Assembly: GCA_964019335.1 (NCBI GenBank)
Contig: OZ025686.1
Coordinates: forward strand, 124,001-188,000
DNA: 64,000 nucleotides
Direction: 5' to 3'
From: Diplonema japonicum
Lineage: Eukaryota > Protista > Euglenozoa: Diplonemea
The notes beneath the pieces were generated by a model that worked only from the letters and a program-made list of their open reading frames with translations, had not been told where the DNA came from and searched no databases. Made by a program: the position numbers and the translations under genes. This document shows, in pieces, positions 35,516 to 42,375 of the stretch. Position 1 is the first letter of the stretch. Every line of letters begins with the position of its first letter.

Positions 35516-38500
35516 CTACATTTCCTGCAGAGAACGCTGAATAGCCCTCATGAGCTCCTCTTCTTCATTCAAGCCACCTTCTTGCTGTTGCTGATCGCCT
35601 GAAGGAGCATTCAACGCAGACATCAAGCTGGCACCGATAGAGGACACTGGAGCGGGCGCCTCAGGAGGGGGTGCGCGCGATCCCTGTTTTTTTTTCTTCT
35701 TTTTCTTTTTTTCCACCACCCAGTACCTGTGTCTCAGGGCCTCTTTTACGGCCAGTCAACTGAGCCCTTTCCGCTTTCACCCATTTACCTTTTTTTTTCA
35801 TTTTTTTTTCTTTTTTTTTTCTTCCCATACAAATTTCCGTGTCACCAGCCTCGCCTAACACCTCATGGAGTTGTTCCAGGACCTTCAAGAATTTCGGGCG
35901 TCTTGACGGTGACGCTTCAGAAGTCCATTTGTGAGCAGTTGCCATGATGAGAGGTGCCATCTCGGCAAAGTACTGCTTGAAGACCTCCTCACAACCTGTT
36001 GGGGGTGACTTGGCGTTGGCGAGGATTGCGTAGCGAAGTGTGCCGAGCCTAAGGCCTTCATTGTACTCAGCAGACCACTTGTCACCCTCGGGGGTGTTCT
36101 GCTGGCGCTCGTTACCCGGCTCGTTGAAGTAGGGGTCCGGTACAAAAATCATGGACTGGATGGAGATAGCAACCTGCGATATAGACGAAACCTTCGGCTG
36201 CCACTTTGTCTCCGCACCGTCACCATGCCAAGTATTCAGCAGCGACAGACACACCTTACCATTCTCGTAAAGATTAGGGTTGAACCTCACAGTGCCACCT
36301 CCCGTTGTCCTCAGCGACACCATCGGCGGGTTCTCCGGGTAGCTCTGCGGAAGGAACACATCAAACACAAACATCCCGTAGCTGTAGGGTGTGTTCTCAG
36401 GGCCTGTTATCACCATTCTAATGTAATTGGCGGGTGCCTCGTTGCACCTAACGAACACGGACGCTTGTGGGTACAGAGGGTTGTCCGCGAACTGCTTGAA
36501 CTCCTTCTTGTACGCCCGAAGGATGGATTTGCTGCCTTCCGCAGACTCGTTTTTGAAGTAGTGGTCCGACAGGTCGCCCATGTCGATCATCTCTGATTGC
36601 ATGTCTTCGAACTTCGCTTTGAAGGCTTCTTCGTTGGACTCGGGGATTTTGCCTGACGGTGGGTTCCAGACAGCGTCGGAGACCTCGGAGGCAGGGGCAG
36701 CGGCGGTTTGTGGGTTCAGGGACTGGAGCTCTTCTTCAAACTTTGCAAGCCTGTTCAGGAGCTGCAGGCCACCAAGCTGCGTTTTCTTGACCTCATCCAC
36801 GGTGCTCAGGACCACCCACCGCTCGTAATCGTCATGAAGGGCGAATGCCCTGCTGAACTCCACAGTGCTGGACAACAGCGATACGATGTTGCATAGTGTT
36901 TGCACGACACCCAGCCTGTCGTAGTCATACTTCTCGGGCTGTACCAGAGATTTCAGGTTATCTCCCCTACTCCCATACATCTGTAGTAAGAAGTACCTTA
37001 CCAAGTGCGCAAGGCTCCGCAGCACCGCTTGGGATTTCAGAGCAGGGGACAGTGGCGGTGGCTGATCGTCCCTGTTGGGGTTCAAAAGCATCTGCACGAT
37101 CTGCAGTGCTTGCAGAGCTGAGGCCATGAACCCCCTTGCAGATCTGCCCTGTGATTCCATGTGGCCTTCTTTCGTCTTCCTGTCAGGTGCGGGGAGCGCA
37201 TCCCATCCACTTTTGTCCTTCATGAGCTGTTGGATGTCGTTCACCTCCGTAAGACGGTTGAGCGCGTCGTCTAGGCAGTGCGTCGCCTCCGTTGCGAGCC
37301 TGTGCATGAACTTTGTGAAATCGTCGTCATCGTCTGCCTGCTTCGACATCCCAGCGACGAGGCCTTCCTTGAACTTCTCCACGACAATGAGTTGCACGAA
37401 CAGCGGCAGGACACGGTCCCTCGCGTGCAACACGTCGTCGTCTTTGTCCATGTCGAAGCCCTGTAGAGCAGTGTGGCAAGGTGACGGCTGCATACCTCTG
37501 ATGTGCTTGCGGAGTATACCTTGAACAGCACCTTCGGCAGGTCACTGCACACAGGGCTCGTCTCCACGATGTTAAACAGGGACGTGGTGCTCCTGTGCCC
37601 CGACCACTGGCTTGCGTTCCACACGTCGTCAATGTTGCGCTGTCTGTGGGTGTCCTGCATGGCGGCTATGAGAGACACAACACGTGCCTCCAGCATGGGG
37701 TGCCTCTGCAGGAGCGTGGGGTGCGTGCACGCCTTAATGGCGAAACGGAGAAGCTGTGGCATTCCCTCTGCCGTCTTCACCGCTTGCGGTGCGAACTGTG
37801 ATTAGTGTAGTGAAGTATGATGTTTATTAAAAAGCATACGTGGCACACAAACACGGCCCAGTCCAGTGCATCCTCCAGCAAAAATGCAGGCGCAGCTTGC
37901 ACGCATTCTGGTACCTTGCTGCTGTCCTTGCTCAGCTCCCTGTCTACGACGCTGCACACGGTCACAGCAAGTGCAGTCGCTTGGTCGATAAATTTCAAGT
38001 TCAGCAACTGCAGTCTGAGAATGTCCCATCTGAAGGCCAGTGAGGCCAGCATAGGGCTGTGTGCCTCGTTGGGGTCGTGGTGTGCCATCGAGAGCGCCCT
38101 CATGAAGGACTCGTGTGCCCATCGTGCCACCCGAATGCTTGGCATCACCAGCGAGTGCATCGCGTTAGCAGCTGTGAACATGATCTCCGTCGCAAAGTTG
38201 AACTCCCCGTCCACAGCCCCCTCCGCGTAGTCTCTTTCCATCTTCACTTCTTTCTTCCACGAAGGAAACGCCTCATGCAGTGCCTTGCTCCTTACGTACT
38301 CCATGGACGCCCGCTCCCCTTGCTTGTCGCACACAGGCTTGGCGAGGCTGAATATCAAGTAAGCGAGGTTCAGAGCAAACAGATGAGGTGCCTTGGTGCC
38401 CTGCATCATCTCGAACTGCCTGAGGTTGTCCTTGGTGATCATAGTTCTGGGCTGCAGCAGGCGGAGGACAGCCTTGAGCCAGTCCATTACAGTCTTGATG

Positions 38501-39843
38501 CCCGCTTTGCCCTTCTTGAGGAGCGTGTCCTTGAGAAGCGTGTCGAAGTCCTTCAAAAGCTGTGAGATGATCTCCCTTGGGCCGACGAGTACCTGCTCCG
38601 TATCGTGGGGGTTCACCTTCGGGTACCCGTTTACACCTTGGAGGAGGTTCTCGACCTCTTCTGGGAATGGGCACACGAGGAATCTGCGTGCCCACGACTG
38701 GATCTCTAGCTGGTTGCCGTACATACTGGAAACCAGCTGGGTTTCCTTCTGCACGAATGTGGAGATCACAGTCGCTCCCGCCGTGGACTTCCCCAACCTC
38801 AGAAGTGAAGTGCACAATCGCGTGACCAGCGGCAGCCCTGCTTTGCGGACATCTCTGTCGTTCTCCTGCAGCATGTACTGCGCTATGGACGTCACCACAT
38901 CAACACCCGTCTCTTCGTGCTCAGACGAAAGGTGGTGGCATATCTCCTCCAGCATGTCGTACGCGGCACTCACATCTGTGTGGTGCAGAAGGGTCTTGAT
39001 GGCGGTGTTTCTTATCGCGCCCTGCTCGAAGACGGACGGGATGAAGGTGGTGAGGTACTGCACTTTGATGCACTGCTTGAGCACCTCACAAGAAGAAGAG
39101 AAGCCTTCCCTCACGAACATGTCGTTGAGGGCCCCGCGAAGCCTGCCGATGCACACGATGAGGAAGCTCTCGTTCTCCCCATGCGGGTGCGCGTCGAGGA
39201 TCTCCTGCACGACGTCCTCCGTGAGCACCGTCACGGAGTCGACCCTGGCCCACAGCTCCTGCGGCGCCTTGGCCTTGGTCAGGGTGTCCGTGTCCTCGAC
39301 ATCGTTGGTGTGGATGAGTGCCGTCATGAGCGACGGGATGTTCTCGTTGGTGTAGTCGGTATCAAGGTTGCGCAGCTGCAGCACATGGCGCAGGAGGTAC
39401 CCGCAGTTCGCCTCGCTCTCCGTGCACTGCATGACCTTCTCAGGTGAGAAGACGGAAGGTGTTTTGGGTGTTGCTTTAGCTGGAGGTGTTGGTGTTGCCA
39501 TCGCCGGCACTGCGACAGGTGTCCGTTTAGGCTCGGGCGTAGATGTCCCTTGCGGGGGCTTGCTGACGGGCGTTTTGTCCAGCATGTTGAGCCTCTTCGA
39601 TCGCATGTCTTCGCTGGACAGGGACTCCACTGTGCTGGTGTCTTGGAGGGTCCTGCCTACAGGGGTGGAAGCTGCTGCTGCTGTTGCTGCGACGGGCGAA
39701 GATGCGGAACTGTCATGGTCAGATTTACGGACAAGGTGTGCCTTCACTTCACCGTCCTTCACAACCTTGATCCCTGCTGCCATGGGGCGGTCGCCGTCGC
39801 TGTCACTGTCGCTGCTGCTGGGGGTGGGGTCTGCACCCGACAT
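35516..39843 (-). CDS. Ufd2/UBE4 core + BIRC6-like UBC (E2) domain + UIM, ~1387 aa; introns 37796-37839, 37461-37495, 35789-35830, 35684-35726
   Basis: Ufd2-core-like motifs (FALNLAYL..LAKP, EFNFATEIMF, PAFLLEDA, LDDALNRLTEVNDIQ). UBC motifs ITGPENTPYSYG...FNPNLYENGKVCLSLLNTW...PYFNEPG. C-terminal UIM NEEEELMRAIQRSLQE. Splicing gives a 4164-nt frame. Confidence 0.87.
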
Positions 39844-39903
39844 TTTTTTTTTTCTCTTCTTACCCCCCCCTTTTTTTTTTGGAGGGACCAAAAAAAATTA
39901 TAA

Positions 39904-40155
39904 TTACTTCACCAAACTTTTTTTCCCCGGCCCCGTGCAGGTAGTGCCCGACGGGTCGTTTCTCAAGAATGCCTCGATCCGGTCTTCGAGTACCTTCAGC
40001 TTGTCCTCCTTCACAAACAGTTCTTTCTCGCTCAGCTCCTGGACGATCACATAATCCCTCCCATTACTCACCGTTCTTACGTCTTCGTCCACCTTTTTAA
40101 CAAACTGCAGCATTGCTACATCTGAGCATCTGACATACATGCCAGGGGTAGCCAT
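39904..40155 (-). CDS. TFB5: TFIIH small subunit TFB5/GTF2H5-like, 83 aa
   Basis: GMYVRCSDVAMLQFV...VIVQELSEKELFV...LEDRI matches the G-x-L-x-x-CD..KQF..IIQDLD..LFV pattern and size. Confidence 0.7.
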   Translation of the reverse strand: MATPGMYVRCSDVAMLQFVKKVDEDVRTVSNGRDYVIVQELSEKELFVKEDKLKVLEDRIEAFLRNDPSGTTCTGPGKKSLVK

Positions 40156-40851: not shown

Positions 40852-42375
40852 TTAGCTTTTTGCCACAGCCAGCGCTGAGATCAGTGCAGCACCTACACCA
40901 CTCCCGTTGGCGGTAGCAACCAATTCCACATTGTGGTTCGTGATCCCCTGTGTTATTTAAAAAAAAACAAAAAAAAAAAAAAAAAAAAAAAACACAAACC
41001 TGCGACCCAAGCACTTCAGATAAGCACGCTTCCATCTGCTCTTTATAGAAGGGAGTTTTGGTGAACACGGAACCATCGATACACACCTTTTAAAAAAGAT
41101 TTTCTTTTTCAGAAAAAATAAAAAAAATACCTTCGCGTTATGGGTGTTGCCGGTTTTCAGTAGAATGGCAGCGATGCCTGCTGCGGCAAGACGGGCGGAA
41201 CGAAGAGTCACGCAGGAGAACAACTCTTTTATGGTGAGAGCCTGCGTGGTGTCTAGCTTGTAGTTGTAAAGGCTTAAAAGAACAGCCTTCGTCGCATCGA
41301 GATCAGGAGAATCATCCTTGATAATCTTAGAAAGCTCGATGGCAGGGAAGGACATGGGCGGGACATTGCACGGGATGGTGGGCAGGACCCCGTGACGGAC
41401 AAGCTTCAGAAGCAAAAGCCGAGCAATGTCGCCGAGATAAAATCCGGAGATAAGCTTTTCAAAACGCTGCTTGCCTCGGTTCGGCGAAGCCTTGTCGATG
41501 ACCTCATCCATCTCAGTGTAGGGAAGGATAGCTTGATTGATGGAATCAAAATTACCCCATTCTATATTAATGCACATCTTTTCGTCGCCGCCGCCCCATC
41601 CAGAAGGCGATGGAAGTTTTTTAATACTTGGAACTGACTCCCAATAACACGCGTTACTCCCTGTTCCCAAGATAGCACCGATTTCAGCTCGGGAGTCTTC
41701 AAAGTAGCCTGTTACCAGTGTACCCACTGTGTCGTTAACCAATGCACGGACTGGAACGTTGATATTCTGACGCTGGAAGGCATCGCGGAGAAGTTTGACG
41801 ACATCTTGACCTTCACAGCCTGATGTGGAGAAACCCTTTGTCCATGTGATCAGGAAACCAGAATCGATGTTAGTCTGCGAAACGGGAAATGAGAATGTGA
41901 ACCCCAGCCCTTGCACGCCCTCTTCCCCCCCAGATTTTTTAACAAGGTACTCCTTAACACACTCCGCAATAAAATCAAACAGCTCAGACCCAGTTCTGTC
42001 CGATTTCATCAGCGCGAGGGGGATTTCGTATTTAATCTGTTCCTCCTTCACGACCTTGCCCTGTTCTAATGCTAAGTCGAGGACTCGGAAGTTCGTCCCA
42101 CCGAGGTCGAGCGCCATAAAATTGCCTGCGACGGAGGTGTCTCCTTTGTAGACGAAGGACGGAAGCATTTTGAAGCTGCTCGGCTTGCCCTCTAGGCCGA
42201 GGAGCATTTCCCCGATAAAATGAACGATGATCTGGTTAAGCTTCTCCACAGAGAGTGACAGACTCTCCTTCACATCGTATATCATAGCGAGGTCCTGCAG
42301 GGCTTTCACACTGTCGTGGCCCTCTCTGACATGCGTCAGCATGGTGGCAAGGCGATCATTTTTTAACGACGTCAT
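40852..42375 (-). CDS. HK: Hexokinase, 475 aa; introns 41087-41130, 40948-40999; PTS2-like N-terminus
   Basis: LDLGGTNFRV, LGFTFSFP, WTKGF, VNDTVGT, ILGTGSNACY, INIEWGNF, FEKLISG, IDGS, GSGVGAAL. Confidence 0.96.

What the first reader, a model, noticed from the sequence alone, without database searches (positions are those of the whole stretch)
35516..39843. Ufd2/E4 scaffold that has swapped its U-box for a built-in BIRC6-like E2 domain plus a UIM
Seen: four short introns join one ~1387-aa frame. It contains Ufd2-core-like motifs, then a UBC domain with an intact catalytic Cys (NPNLYENGKVCLSLL) preceded by a BIRC6-type segment (HYF...ASVFVRCNE), then a terminal UIM. No U-box (PDEFLDP-type) sequence follows the core. 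Known: Ufd2/UBE4 proteins end in a U-box that recruits a separate E2, whereas BIRC6 and UBE2O are self-contained E2/E3 hybrids. Inference: a single-chain ubiquitin-chain-elongating machine (scaffold + E2 + ubiquitin receptor). I do not recognise this architecture from model organisms.
Basis: partly seen in the sequence, partly recalled or inferred. Interest (0 to 1): 0.82.

Follow-up and report, generated by a model that had tools for sequence, protein, structure and literature searches.

The report
Ufd2 scaffold fused to built-in E2
This is a real five-exon gene for a ubiquitin enzyme in which the Ufd2 "chain-extension" scaffold carries its own BIRC6-type E2 catalytic domain and a ubiquitin-binding motif instead of a U-box. 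It belongs to an old, widespread protein family that I could not find described in any paper.

Summary
On the minus strand, 39843-35516, five exons separated by four short introns (44, 35, 42 and 43 nt) encode about 1387 aa.

- **Domains:** Pfam finds Ufd2P_core in exon 1 and exon 3, then UQ_con, then a C-terminal UIM. No U-box is present.
- **Fusion is not a splicing artefact:** exon 3 alone is one open frame holding both the end of the Ufd2 core and the E2 domain.
- **E2 type:** it is BIRC6-type (207 bits to PDB 3ceg, against 118 for UBE2O), and the catalytic Cys is intact.
- **Splice model:** the exons tile a transcript-derived Lacrimia protein, and an intronless paralog on another contig has the same architecture. 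The scan had already noted that paralog as s1-867169.
- **No canonical Ufd2:** the genome, probably a diplonemid, shows no gene with both the core and a U-box.

The architecture is not unique. It occurs in diplonemids, a euglenid, green algae (Chlamydomonas "UBC21", Volvox), amphioxus, molluscs and many metagenomes. All are unnamed or listed as plain E2s, and no paper I found describes it.

The function is inferred, not shown: a self-contained E2/E4 hybrid that binds ubiquitin chains. The spliced protein was searched exon by exon and never joined.

The parts
37840..39843 (-). Exon 1 (668 aa). Residues 1-141 are a disordered Ser/Pro/Thr/Ala-rich N-terminus. The rest is the N-terminal part of the Ufd2-like helical scaffold.
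   Evidence: Translation is. Pfam Ufd2P_core scores E 3.4e-8. The AF2 model has pLDDT 80.9, with residues 1-141 mostly below 50. Foldseek's top six matches are yeast Ufd2 3m62, 3m63, 2qj0, 2qiz and 9kht. Residues 78-668 align to Lacrimia P0005 2-598 at 39% identity.
39574..39618 (-). Arg/Lys-rich helix (SEDMRSKRLNMLDK, exon 1 residues 76-90) inside the disordered N-terminus. It is a candidate p97/Cdc48-binding motif of the VBM kind.
   Evidence: It is the only confident helix (H77-89) in the disordered region of the model. It is conserved as MEEMRAKRLAMLEK in Lacrimia and as two RRRRL copies in Namystynia. UBE4B binds p97 through an N-terminal VBM (PMC5559722, PMC2654131). Binding itself is inferred only.
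37796..37839 (-). Intron 1 (44 nt, GTATGC...ACAG).
   Evidence: The frame changes here. The flanking exons abut on the intronless paralog and on P0005.
37496..37795 (-). Exon 2 (100 aa), the middle of the Ufd2-like core.
   Evidence: Translation is. It is 63% identical to P0005 599-700. It fills the gap between E1 and E3 on the paralog.
37461..37495 (-). Intron 2 (35 nt, GTATGC...ACAG).
   Evidence: Seen. The junction ...SASTSE|GFDMDKDD matches the paralog's ...AGLERAG|GYDIKKDE.
35831..37460 (-). Exon 3 (543 aa plus 1 nt). One ORF holds the C-terminal half of the Ufd2 core (aa 20-245), a linker, and the BIRC6-type pre-UBC segment plus UBC domain (aa 305-516).
   Evidence: Translation is. Pfam gives Ufd2P_core E 3e-23 and UQ_con E 4.4e-22. 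The PDB sequence search gives BIRC6 3ceg at 2.8e-60. It is 60% identical to P0005 701-1253.
35913..36548 (-). BIRC6-type E2 module: pre-UBC helix, UBC fold and C-terminal extension.
   Evidence: Exon 3 aa 305-516 align to BIRC6 3ceg 67-280 at 207 bits, against 118 bits for UBE2O and 115 for UBE2Z.
36249..36251 (-). Codon of the catalytic cysteine (exon 3 Cys404, in FNPNLYENGKVCLSLL).
   Evidence: Read directly from the sequence. This column is at least 90% conserved in the 42-row family alignment and aligns with the BIRC6 active-site stretch.
35789..35830 (-). Intron 3 (42 nt, GTATGG...AAAG, A-rich). It splits a Cys codon.
   Evidence: Removing it gives ...GDTEI-C-KWVKAERAQLTGRKR..., which matches Lacrimia ...GDNEMCKWVEAGKATHLTRKR. 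The related ENA protein P0004 reads through a 'C M' at the same point, consistent with a T|GTATG site there.
35727..35788 (-). Exon 4 (62 nt mini-exon). It completes the split Cys codon and encodes KWVKAERAQLTGRKRGPETQ.
   Evidence: Translation is. Homology to P0005 residues about 1254-1275 is seen.
35684..35726 (-). Intron 4 (43 nt, GTACTG...ACAG).
   Evidence: With the acceptor at 35685-35684, this is the only GT in the right phase to reach the UIM frame (worked out). Exon 5 aligns to the C-terminus of P0005 at E 3e-6.
35516..35683 (-). Exon 5 (55 aa plus stop). A Pro/Ala/Gln-rich tail ends in a UIM at 35519-35569 (EEEELMRAIQRSLQEM).
   Evidence: Translation is. Pfam UIM_2 scores E 0.0026, 18.1 bits, under the cut-off. 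Orthologs end in UIMs: Lacrimia (Pfam UIM E 4.7e-4), Sulcionema, and Namystynia with two.

Best explanation
**Shown.** The locus is one spliced gene of five exons on the minus strand. It encodes a protein of about 1387 aa made of these parts, in order:
1. A disordered N-terminus with one Arg/Lys-rich helix.
2. A complete Ufd2/UBE4-type helical scaffold, homologous to yeast Ufd2 up to the point where the U-box would begin.
3. A BIRC6-type E2 module with its active-site cysteine, in place of the U-box.
4. A flexible tail ending in a UIM.

It is the diplonemid 'UIM-type' member of an old eukaryotic family of Ufd2-core/E2 hybrids. A lineage-specific duplicate, without a UIM, sits on contig 14. The genome shows no canonical Ufd2 with both core and U-box.

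**Inferred mechanism.**
1. E1 charges the built-in UBC cysteine with ubiquitin.
2. The Ufd2-like scaffold holds an already ubiquitylated client or a ubiquitin chain. Yeast Ufd2 does this for K29-linked chains.
3. The tethered E2~Ub then adds further ubiquitins without needing a U-box or RING partner. The protein would thus be a self-contained E2/E4 hybrid.
4. The UIM adds affinity for ubiquitin chains.
5. The basic N-terminal helix may dock the enzyme on Cdc48/p97, as the VBM of UBE4B does.
For: **Gene model and fusion**
- Exon 3 is a single ORF containing Ufd2P_core (E 3e-23) and UQ_con (E 4.4e-22).
- The exons tile the Lacrimia transcript-derived protein P0005 and the intronless 1183-aa paralog.

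**Scaffold is Ufd2-like**
- The family profile matches yeast Ufd2 at E 8e-70 over Ufd2 residues 33-874.
- The AF2 model of window exon 1 has Ufd2 as its top six PDB matches.
- The paralog model (pLDDT 83, pTM 0.82) matches Ufd2 over about 950 columns and the BIRC6 UBC at TM 0.8.

**E2 module**
- The best PDB match is BIRC6 at 207 bits, with the active-site stretch conserved.
- The Cys column is at least 90% conserved in the family.

**No U-box and no canonical Ufd2**
- No U-box appears in any exon.
- In the whole genome, Ufd2P_core is found only at the two hybrid genes, and none of the 13 U-box hits lies next to a core.

**Family context**
- 43 of the 150 best representative clusters carry core followed by UBC.
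- Pfam confirms the architecture in Entosiphon, Branchiostoma, Gigantopelta and Myrmecia, and in 20 further proteins, mostly green-algal, including Chlamydomonas.
- The hybrid UBCs form one clan, separate from the BIRC6 giants.
- The hybrid cores are monophyletic against canonical Ufd2, with Euglenozoa, animals and green algae each forming a clade.

**Ubiquitin-chain function**
- UIMs recur in the family at different ends: N-terminal in green algae, C-terminal in diplonemids.
- Ufd2 binds K29 chains and adds K48 ubiquitin (PMC5303827).
- UBE4B has an N-terminal p97-binding VBM (PMC5559722, PMC2654131).
- The window's RSKRL helix is the only structured element in the disordered N-terminus.
Against: - No biochemical or transcript data exist for this gene. 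Introns 3 and 4, and therefore the UIM, rest on homology and reading frame only.
- The UIM scores just below Pfam's cut-off.
- The VBM-like helix in the window copy is weaker (R-S-K-R-L) than in Namystynia (RRRRL). It is absent from the paralog clade and from most family members.
- It is not shown that the scaffold binds ubiquitin. The two N-terminal loops that bind K29 chains in yeast Ufd2 were not mapped onto this protein.
- BIRC6 and UBE2O use their non-E2 parts to bind primary substrates, not chains, so the scaffold could be a substrate receptor instead.
- I could not measure where the UBC domain sits relative to the core in the AF2 model.
Confidence: 0.6

Rival explanations
1. It is an E2/E3 hybrid for primary substrates, working like BIRC6 or UBE2O. 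The Ufd2-like solenoid would be a receptor for non-ubiquitylated client proteins, and the enzyme would mono- or multi-ubiquitylate them directly rather than extend existing chains.
For: The E2 module is closest to BIRC6 and next to UBE2O. In both of those, the non-E2 parts bind substrates (titles of PDB entries 7un3 and 8e2d, plus general knowledge). Animal members and the Diplonema paralog carry a signal peptide or TM anchors, which suggests localised client sets.
Against: The scaffold is homologous to Ufd2 along its whole length, and Ufd2's documented ligand is a ubiquitin chain (PMC5303827). UIMs were added repeatedly in the family, which fits ubiquitylated clients.
Confidence: 0.22
2. It is an ordinary, unusually large E2 that still needs a separate RING or U-box E3. 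The Ufd2-like part would serve only as a docking platform, for example for Cdc48 or proteasome shuttle factors.
For: The genome has at least 13 U-box domains in other genes. Yeast Ufd2's scaffold binds Rad23 and Dsk2 UBLs (PDB 3m62 and 3m63) and Cdc48. Chlamydomonas papers list the ortholog simply as the E2 'UBC21'.
Against: The nearest characterised E2 modules (BIRC6, UBE2O) act without a separate E3. The PDB names them 'dual E2/E3' and '(E3-independent) E2'. The E2 sits exactly where Ufd2's E2-recruiting U-box would be.
Confidence: 0.13
3. It is a gene-model artefact: two neighbouring genes (a U-box-less Ufd2 remnant and a separate E2), or a pseudogene wrongly read as one protein.
For: The frame changes four times, and the A-rich stretches at 35790-35830 and 35684-35715 look like the intergenic spacers of this genome.
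Against: Exon 3 alone is one uninterrupted 543-codon frame spanning the end of the core and the UBC. An intronless paralog has the same architecture. Transcriptome-derived orthologs from four other euglenozoans are single chains. All exons are conserved at 39-63% identity with no internal stops.
Confidence: 0.03

Closest known systems
Ufd2 / UBE4A / UBE4B (U-box E4 ubiquitin chain-elongation factors; PDB 2qiz, 3m62, 9khs)
   Same: The helical scaffold is homologous over essentially its whole length: Pfam Ufd2P_core, and a family profile at E 8e-70 to yeast Ufd2 residues 33-874. The predicted fold is the same. Like UBE4B, there may be an N-terminal p97-binding basic helix.
   Different: There is no U-box. 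At the point where Ufd2's U-box begins, a complete E2 module begins instead, so the E2 is covalently built in rather than recruited. A C-terminal UIM is added.
BIRC6 (BRUCE/Apollon), a giant dual E2/E3 enzyme (PDB 3ceg, 8atm, 9qgw)
   Same: It has the closest E2 module: 207 bits, including the pre-UBC segment, the FNPN...C active-site stretch and the C-terminal helical extension. The paralog model superposes at TM about 0.8 and 35% identity.
   Different: There is no BIR domain and no 4000-aa scaffold, and similarity stops about 30-70 residues upstream of the UBC. In the UBC tree the hybrids form a clan of their own beside the BIRC6 giants.
UBE2O and UBE2Z (E3-independent or large E2s of the same UBC subgroup)
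   Same: They have the same extended UBC subtype (115-118 bits). UBE2O is likewise a single-chain E2/E3 hybrid.
   Different: UBE2O's substrate-binding part is made of SH3-like and coiled-coil domains (Pfam PF23043, PF23044 and PF23046 in P0003), not a Ufd2 solenoid.
Database members of the same hybrid family: Chlamydomonas reinhardtii Cre12.g510300 'UBC21', Volvox VOLCADRAFT_116740, Branchiostoma LOC118417258, Gigantopelta LOC121387745, Diplonema papillatum 'putative ubiquitin-conjugating enzyme protein 17', Lacrimia lanifica EP01063_P034432
   Same: They share the Ufd2P_core + UQ_con architecture and are collinear from core to UBC. Lacrimia, Sulcionema and Namystynia also share the C-terminal UIM and the basic N-terminal helix.
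   Different: Green algae carry their UIMs at the N-terminus. Animal members have a signal peptide plus a TM segment. The Diplonema/contig-14 paralog type lacks the UIM tail. None has been characterised, and papers list UBC21 only as an E2.

Membership tests
Ufd2/UBE4 E4 ligases | Ufd2P_core helical scaffold | tested here: met
   Pfam PF10408 scores above the gathering score in exon 1 (32.8 bits) and exon 3 (82.6 bits). The family profile matches yeast Ufd2 at E 8e-70. The exon 1 model's top six PDB matches are Ufd2.
Ufd2/UBE4 E4 ligases | C-terminal U-box that recruits a separate E2 | tested here: not met
   No U-box hit at E<=10 in any exon. A whole-genome U-box scan finds none on this contig near the gene. 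Sequence after the core is a UBC domain.
Ufd2/UBE4 E4 ligases | Ubiquitin-chain elongation or branching activity on pre-ubiquitylated substrates | not testable with these tools
   This needs an in vitro assay.
UBC-fold E2 enzymes, BIRC6 subtype | UQ_con fold with active-site Cys after the (H/F)PN motif | tested here: met
   UQ_con scores E 4.4e-22. FNPNLYENGKVCLSLL has its Cys at exon 3 residue 404. It aligns to the BIRC6 active-site stretch.
UBC-fold E2 enzymes, BIRC6 subtype | Closer to BIRC6 than to other E2 subtypes, including the pre-UBC segment and the C-terminal extension | tested here: met
   207 bits to 3ceg over query residues 305-516, against 118 bits for UBE2O, 115 for UBE2Z and 46 or fewer for classical E2s.
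BIRC6 proper (giant IAP E2/E3) | BIR domain and giant N-terminal scaffold | tested here: not met
   No BIR or BIRC6 Pfam domain in any exon. In the UBC tree the hybrids lie outside the clan that holds the 3000-5000-aa proteins.
Ufd2-core/UBC hybrid family (PF10408 + PF00179 in one chain; unnamed) | Collinear core, then BIRC6-type linker, then UBC in one polypeptide | tested here: met
   Exon 3 is a single ORF. Single-stretch alignments over profile positions 1-553 reach members from diplonemids, a euglenid, animals and algae. Exons tile P0005.
Ufd2-core/UBC hybrid family (PF10408 + PF00179 in one chain; unnamed) | Placement inside the family clade in trees | tested here: met
   In the UBC tree, window exon 3 sits in a starred (96) clade with Lacrimia, Sulcionema and Namystynia, inside the hybrid clan. 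In the core tree, the orthologs sit inside the Euglenozoa clade (support 100).
UIM (ubiquitin-interacting motif) | Acidic run, then hydrophobic residue-x-x-Ala-x-x-x-Ser-x-x-acidic, forming a single helix | tested here: inconclusive
   EEEELMRAIQRSLQE fits the pattern by eye. Pfam UIM_2 scores E 0.0026, 18.1 bits, against a 21-bit cut-off. The ortholog's UIM scores 20.2 bits against 21. Ubiquitin binding was not tested.
VBM (p97/VCP-binding motif) proteins | Short Arg-rich helix that binds the p97 N-domain | not testable with these tools
   The helix at residues 77-89 contains R-S-K-R-L. Orthologs have RAKRL and RRRRL. No profile model was available, and binding was not tested.

The most novel reading that the evidence does not exclude
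Ufd2-core/E2 hybrids are an ancient class of self-sufficient E4 enzymes dating from near the last eukaryotic common ancestor. In them the acceptor-chain-binding scaffold and the donor E2 are one polypeptide. In diplonemids they have fully replaced the canonical U-box Ufd2, and the UIM and a p97-binding helix tie the enzyme to Cdc48-dependent degradation. If so, this is a minimal natural system for studying how an E4 positions an acceptor ubiquitin relative to E2~Ub.
Probability: 0.4. Interest if true: 0.65.

Novelty: new variant of a known kind. Interest (0 to 1): 0.5.

Why it matters
- **A simpler model of E4 action.** E4 enzymes are understood mainly from yeast Ufd2, where the E2 is recruited non-covalently. 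A natural single chain joining the Ufd2 scaffold to an E3-independent-type E2 would be a simpler object for biochemistry and structure, because it has a fixed stoichiometry of acceptor-binding platform and donor E2~Ub.
- **A gap in the ubiquitin catalogue.** The family is present in experimentally tractable organisms: Chlamydomonas (UBC21), amphioxus, and the transformable diplonemid Paradiplonema papillatum. It is absent from yeast, fly, worm, mammals and land-plant model lists, which probably explains why it has gone undescribed.
- **A possible replacement of Ufd2.** In this genome the hybrids are the only genes carrying a Ufd2 core, so they may perform all Ufd2-type functions there.
- **Limits.** The sequences are already in public databases, so the value lies in recognising and testing the family, not in this locus being unique.

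Tried and rejected
**Steps that failed or led nowhere**
- The first deep-search job, with the three-sequence full-length alignment A1, failed because the profile exceeded 1200 positions. I re-ran it with A3, which aligns window exon 3 with the paralog's C-terminal half.
- The Rfam scan of the window found nothing, so there was no RNA clue to the taxon.
- Hexokinase against the PDB did not identify the organism.
- A Pfam call with 10 proteins exceeded the residue limit and was repeated with 7.
- The 2025 Ufd2/Ubc4 structure paper is not held, so I could not map its chain-binding residues.
- I could not read coordinates of the AF2 models, so I did not measure the UBC-to-core geometry.

**Readings I rejected**
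- A fifth 21-nt 'intron' at 37001-36981 is in frame and aligns residue for residue with the paralog.
- A single 147-nt last intron (35830-35684) gives the wrong phase and a stop after 7 codons (worked out).
- Two separate genes: exon 3 is one ORF.
- A lineage-specific domain swap: the family is old and monophyletic.

- The spliced protein was never joined. All searches, folds and alignments used single exons or the intronless paralog.

Full report
**Gene model**

The gene lies on the minus strand. ORF listing and direct reading show four frame changes between the ATG at 39843 and the stop at 35516-35518. Each coincides with a short GT...ACAG interval: 37839-37796 (44 nt), 37495-37461 (35 nt), 35830-35789 (42 nt) and 35726-35684 (43 nt). 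Three of them start GTATG. That pattern (GTATG...ACAG within 25-60 nt) occurs 19 times on the minus strand of the window, 4 times on the plus strand and 7.7 times in shuffles.

Every search, alignment and fold used single exons or an intronless paralog.

**Domains**

Pfam on the separate exons gives:
- Ufd2P_core in exon 1: E 3.4e-8, profile positions 56-307.
- Ufd2P_core in exon 3: E 3e-23, profile positions 413-627 of 628.
- UQ_con in exon 3: E 4.4e-22.
- UIM_2 in exon 5: E 0.0026, just under the cut-off.
- No U-box anywhere.

Exon 3 is one uninterrupted frame, so the end of the Ufd2 core and the E2 domain are in one polypeptide whatever the introns do.

Against PDB sequences the E2 module is clearly BIRC6-type: 207 bits to 3ceg over residues 305-516. 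UBE2O scores 118 bits, UBE2Z 115, and ordinary E2s 46 or fewer. The catalytic cysteine in FNPNLYENGKVCLSLL is intact, at codon 36251-36249.

**Support for the splice model from relatives**

- The window's genome (62.5 Mb, 132 contigs) has a second Ufd2P_core locus on contig 14. It is an intronless 1183-aa ORF with the same core + UBC architecture.
- Exons 1, 2 and 3 abut on that paralog with no gap or overlap.
- The exons also tile the transcript-derived Lacrimia lanifica protein P0005: E1 78-668 matches 2-598 (39% identity), E2 matches 599-700 (63%), E3 matches 701-1253 (60%), and E5 matches 1281-1338 (E 3e-6).
- The mini-exon KWVKAERAQLTGRKRGPETQ corresponds to P0005 'CKWVEAGKATHLTRKRERTEP'. 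That supports introns 3 and 4.
- P0005 ends in a UIM (Pfam). The Sulcionema ortholog also ends in one, and Namystynia in two.
- An in-frame 21-nt GT..AG stretch at 37001-36981 is coding.

**Is the N-terminal 900 aa really Ufd2-like?**

Yes, by three tests.
- A 42-row family profile hits yeast Ufd2 (2qiz, 3m62, 9khs) at E 8e-70, covering Ufd2 residues 33-874. That is everything up to the U-box.
- The same profile hits BIRC6 residues 4496-4825 from profile position 921 onward, so the junction is clean.
- The AF2 model of the paralog (pLDDT 83, pTM 0.82) matches Ufd2 over about 950 columns and the BIRC6 UBC at TM about 0.8. The AF2 model of the window's own exon 1 (pLDDT 81) has yeast Ufd2 as its six best PDB matches, followed only by generic solenoids.

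**How widespread is it?**

The word-based search with the paralog found Diplonema papillatum 'putative ubiquitin-conjugating enzyme protein 17' and an ENA protein, both PF10408 + PF00179.

The exhaustive HMMER search used a profile of window exon 3 plus the paralog's C-terminal half. It gave 8419 hits. Among the best 150 representatives, 43 clusters carry core followed by UBC. Named sources include:
- the diplonemids Lacrimia, Sulcionema and Namystynia;
- the euglenid Entosiphon;
- Branchiostoma floridae;
- the gastropods Gigantopelta and Batillaria;
- the green algae Myrmecia, Volvox and Sanguina;
- many metagenomic eukaryotes.

Pfam confirms full-length Ufd2P_core (E 1e-80 to 1e-103) plus UQ_con in these. 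A further search added Chlamydomonas reinhardtii CHLRE_12g510300v5, Trebouxia, Elliptochloris, Bryopsis, Botryococcus, Nannochloris and Haematococcus.

**Trees**

In a UBC tree all 56 hybrid UBCs fall in one clan of 67 rows (SH-aLRT 90). The other 11 rows in that clan are fragments of 258-411 aa. This clan is separate from the one holding the BIRC6 giants.

In a core tree rooted on three canonical U-box Ufd2 proteins, the hybrids are monophyletic (99). Euglenozoa, animals and green algae each form a clade (100). The window-type and contig-14-type diplonemid genes are sister clades next to Entosiphon.

The fusion is therefore old, and the duplication is specific to diplonemids. The window's organism is probably a diplonemid not represented in the databases. 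The nearest sequences are 60-61% identical.

**Canonical Ufd2 in this genome**

Ufd2P_core is found only at the two hybrid genes. Thirteen U-box domains lie elsewhere, none beside a core. A canonical Ufd2 query hits only the two hybrids with its core part and two unrelated small U-box ORFs with its U-box part. This is a six-frame, exon-by-exon search, so a very fragmented gene could be missed.

**Accessory features**

- UIMs recur in the family at opposite ends: N-terminal in green algae (Myrmecia, Volvox, Trebouxia, Elliptochloris, Bryopsis, Botryococcus) and C-terminal in the diplonemid UIM clade.
- Animal members have a signal peptide plus a TM segment, and the Diplonema paralog has an N-terminal TM helix. 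The scan's note s1-867169 describes the contig-14 paralog as membrane-anchored. I confirmed that paralog's core + E2 but did not find the anchor in the ORF I read.
- In the window protein the only helix in the disordered first 141 residues is SEDMRSKRLNMLDK at residues 77-89. It is conserved as RAKRL in Lacrimia and as two RRRRL copies in Namystynia.
- UBE4B binds p97 through an N-terminal Arg-rich VBM (PMC5559722, PMC2654131). The resemblance is a lead, not a test.

**Literature**

Searches for the Pfam pair, for Ufd2 with BIRC6 or with 'UBC domain', and for locus names found no description of the architecture. Marín 2010 (PMC3087547) treats all Ufd2 relatives as core + U-box. Chlamydomonas Cre12.g510300 appears only as 'UBC21' in three places:
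- a plain E2 in a table (PMC7522501);
- a lead-induced transcript (PMC7838096);
- a protein of plus-gamete cilia (PMC9561859).

The library covers open-access papers only.

**Mechanism**

The architecture, the conserved catalytic Cys and the homology are shown. The rest is inferred. E1 would charge the built-in E2. The Ufd2-like scaffold would hold a ubiquitylated client or chain, as yeast Ufd2 holds K29-linked chains and adds K48 ubiquitin (PMC5303827). The tethered E2~Ub would extend it without a U-box or RING. The UIM would add chain affinity, and the basic helix may dock on Cdc48.

The rivals are:
- a BIRC6/UBE2O-like hybrid acting on naked substrates;
- a large E2 that still needs an external E3;
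- a gene-model artefact, which is essentially excluded.

**Verdict**

The architecture is not unique to this organism. It is an ancient, widespread, uncharacterised family, and this gene is its diplonemid UIM-bearing member.

**Steps that failed**

Noticed in passing
G000:C14:70896-74447 (L001:589-4140, minus strand): An intronless 1183-aa paralog has the same Ufd2-core + BIRC6-type UBC architecture. It ends ...STCCTWA with no UIM tail. It is 41% identical to window exon 3 and 37% identical to the Diplonema papillatum protein P0001, which has an N-terminal TM helix. The scan noted it as s1-867169.
   Followed up: partly
window 39844-39906: The upstream same-strand ORF (39904-40155) stops only about 60 nt before this gene's ATG. 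The spacer consists of homopolymer runs (T8, A10, G8, A11). Tight same-strand packing fits polycistronic, trans-spliced euglenozoan gene arrays.
   Followed up: no
window, whole; minus strand: Short GTATG...ACAG intervals of 25-60 nt occur 19 times on the minus strand, 4 times on the plus strand and 7.7 times in shuffles. This suggests that most genes here are on the minus strand and share this micro-intron type.
   Followed up: partly
P0004 (ENA protein from a 1.75-Mb contig), compared with window 35831-37460: This 566-aa gene prediction is 61% identical to exon 3. It starts at the Met just after the intron 2 position and reads 'C M...' into apparent junk at the intron 3 position. A related, publicly assembled genome therefore probably has introns at the same two sites, and its gene is mis-predicted.
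   Followed up: partly
window 40957-42375 (minus strand): This is a hexokinase gene; the best PDB matches are animal hexokinases at E about 1e-142. The ORF's C-terminal tail runs into a poly-Phe/Lys low-complexity stretch, so the true 3' end probably involves another short intron.
   Followed up: no
Family members P0013 (Gigantopelta), P0016 (Branchiostoma), P0021/P0043/P0202/P0205 (green algae): Animal hybrids begin with a signal peptide, a short luminal stretch and one TM helix. Green-algal hybrids begin with one or two UIMs. The family has therefore acquired different targeting or ubiquitin-binding add-ons in different lineages.
   Followed up: partly
window 36640-36700 (exon 3 residues about 255-275): A W-x-P-P-x-G motif (AVWNPPSGKI) sits in the linker between the core and the E2 module. 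It is conserved in all diplonemid members of both paralog types but not in the euglenid, animals or algae. Its function is unknown.
   Followed up: no
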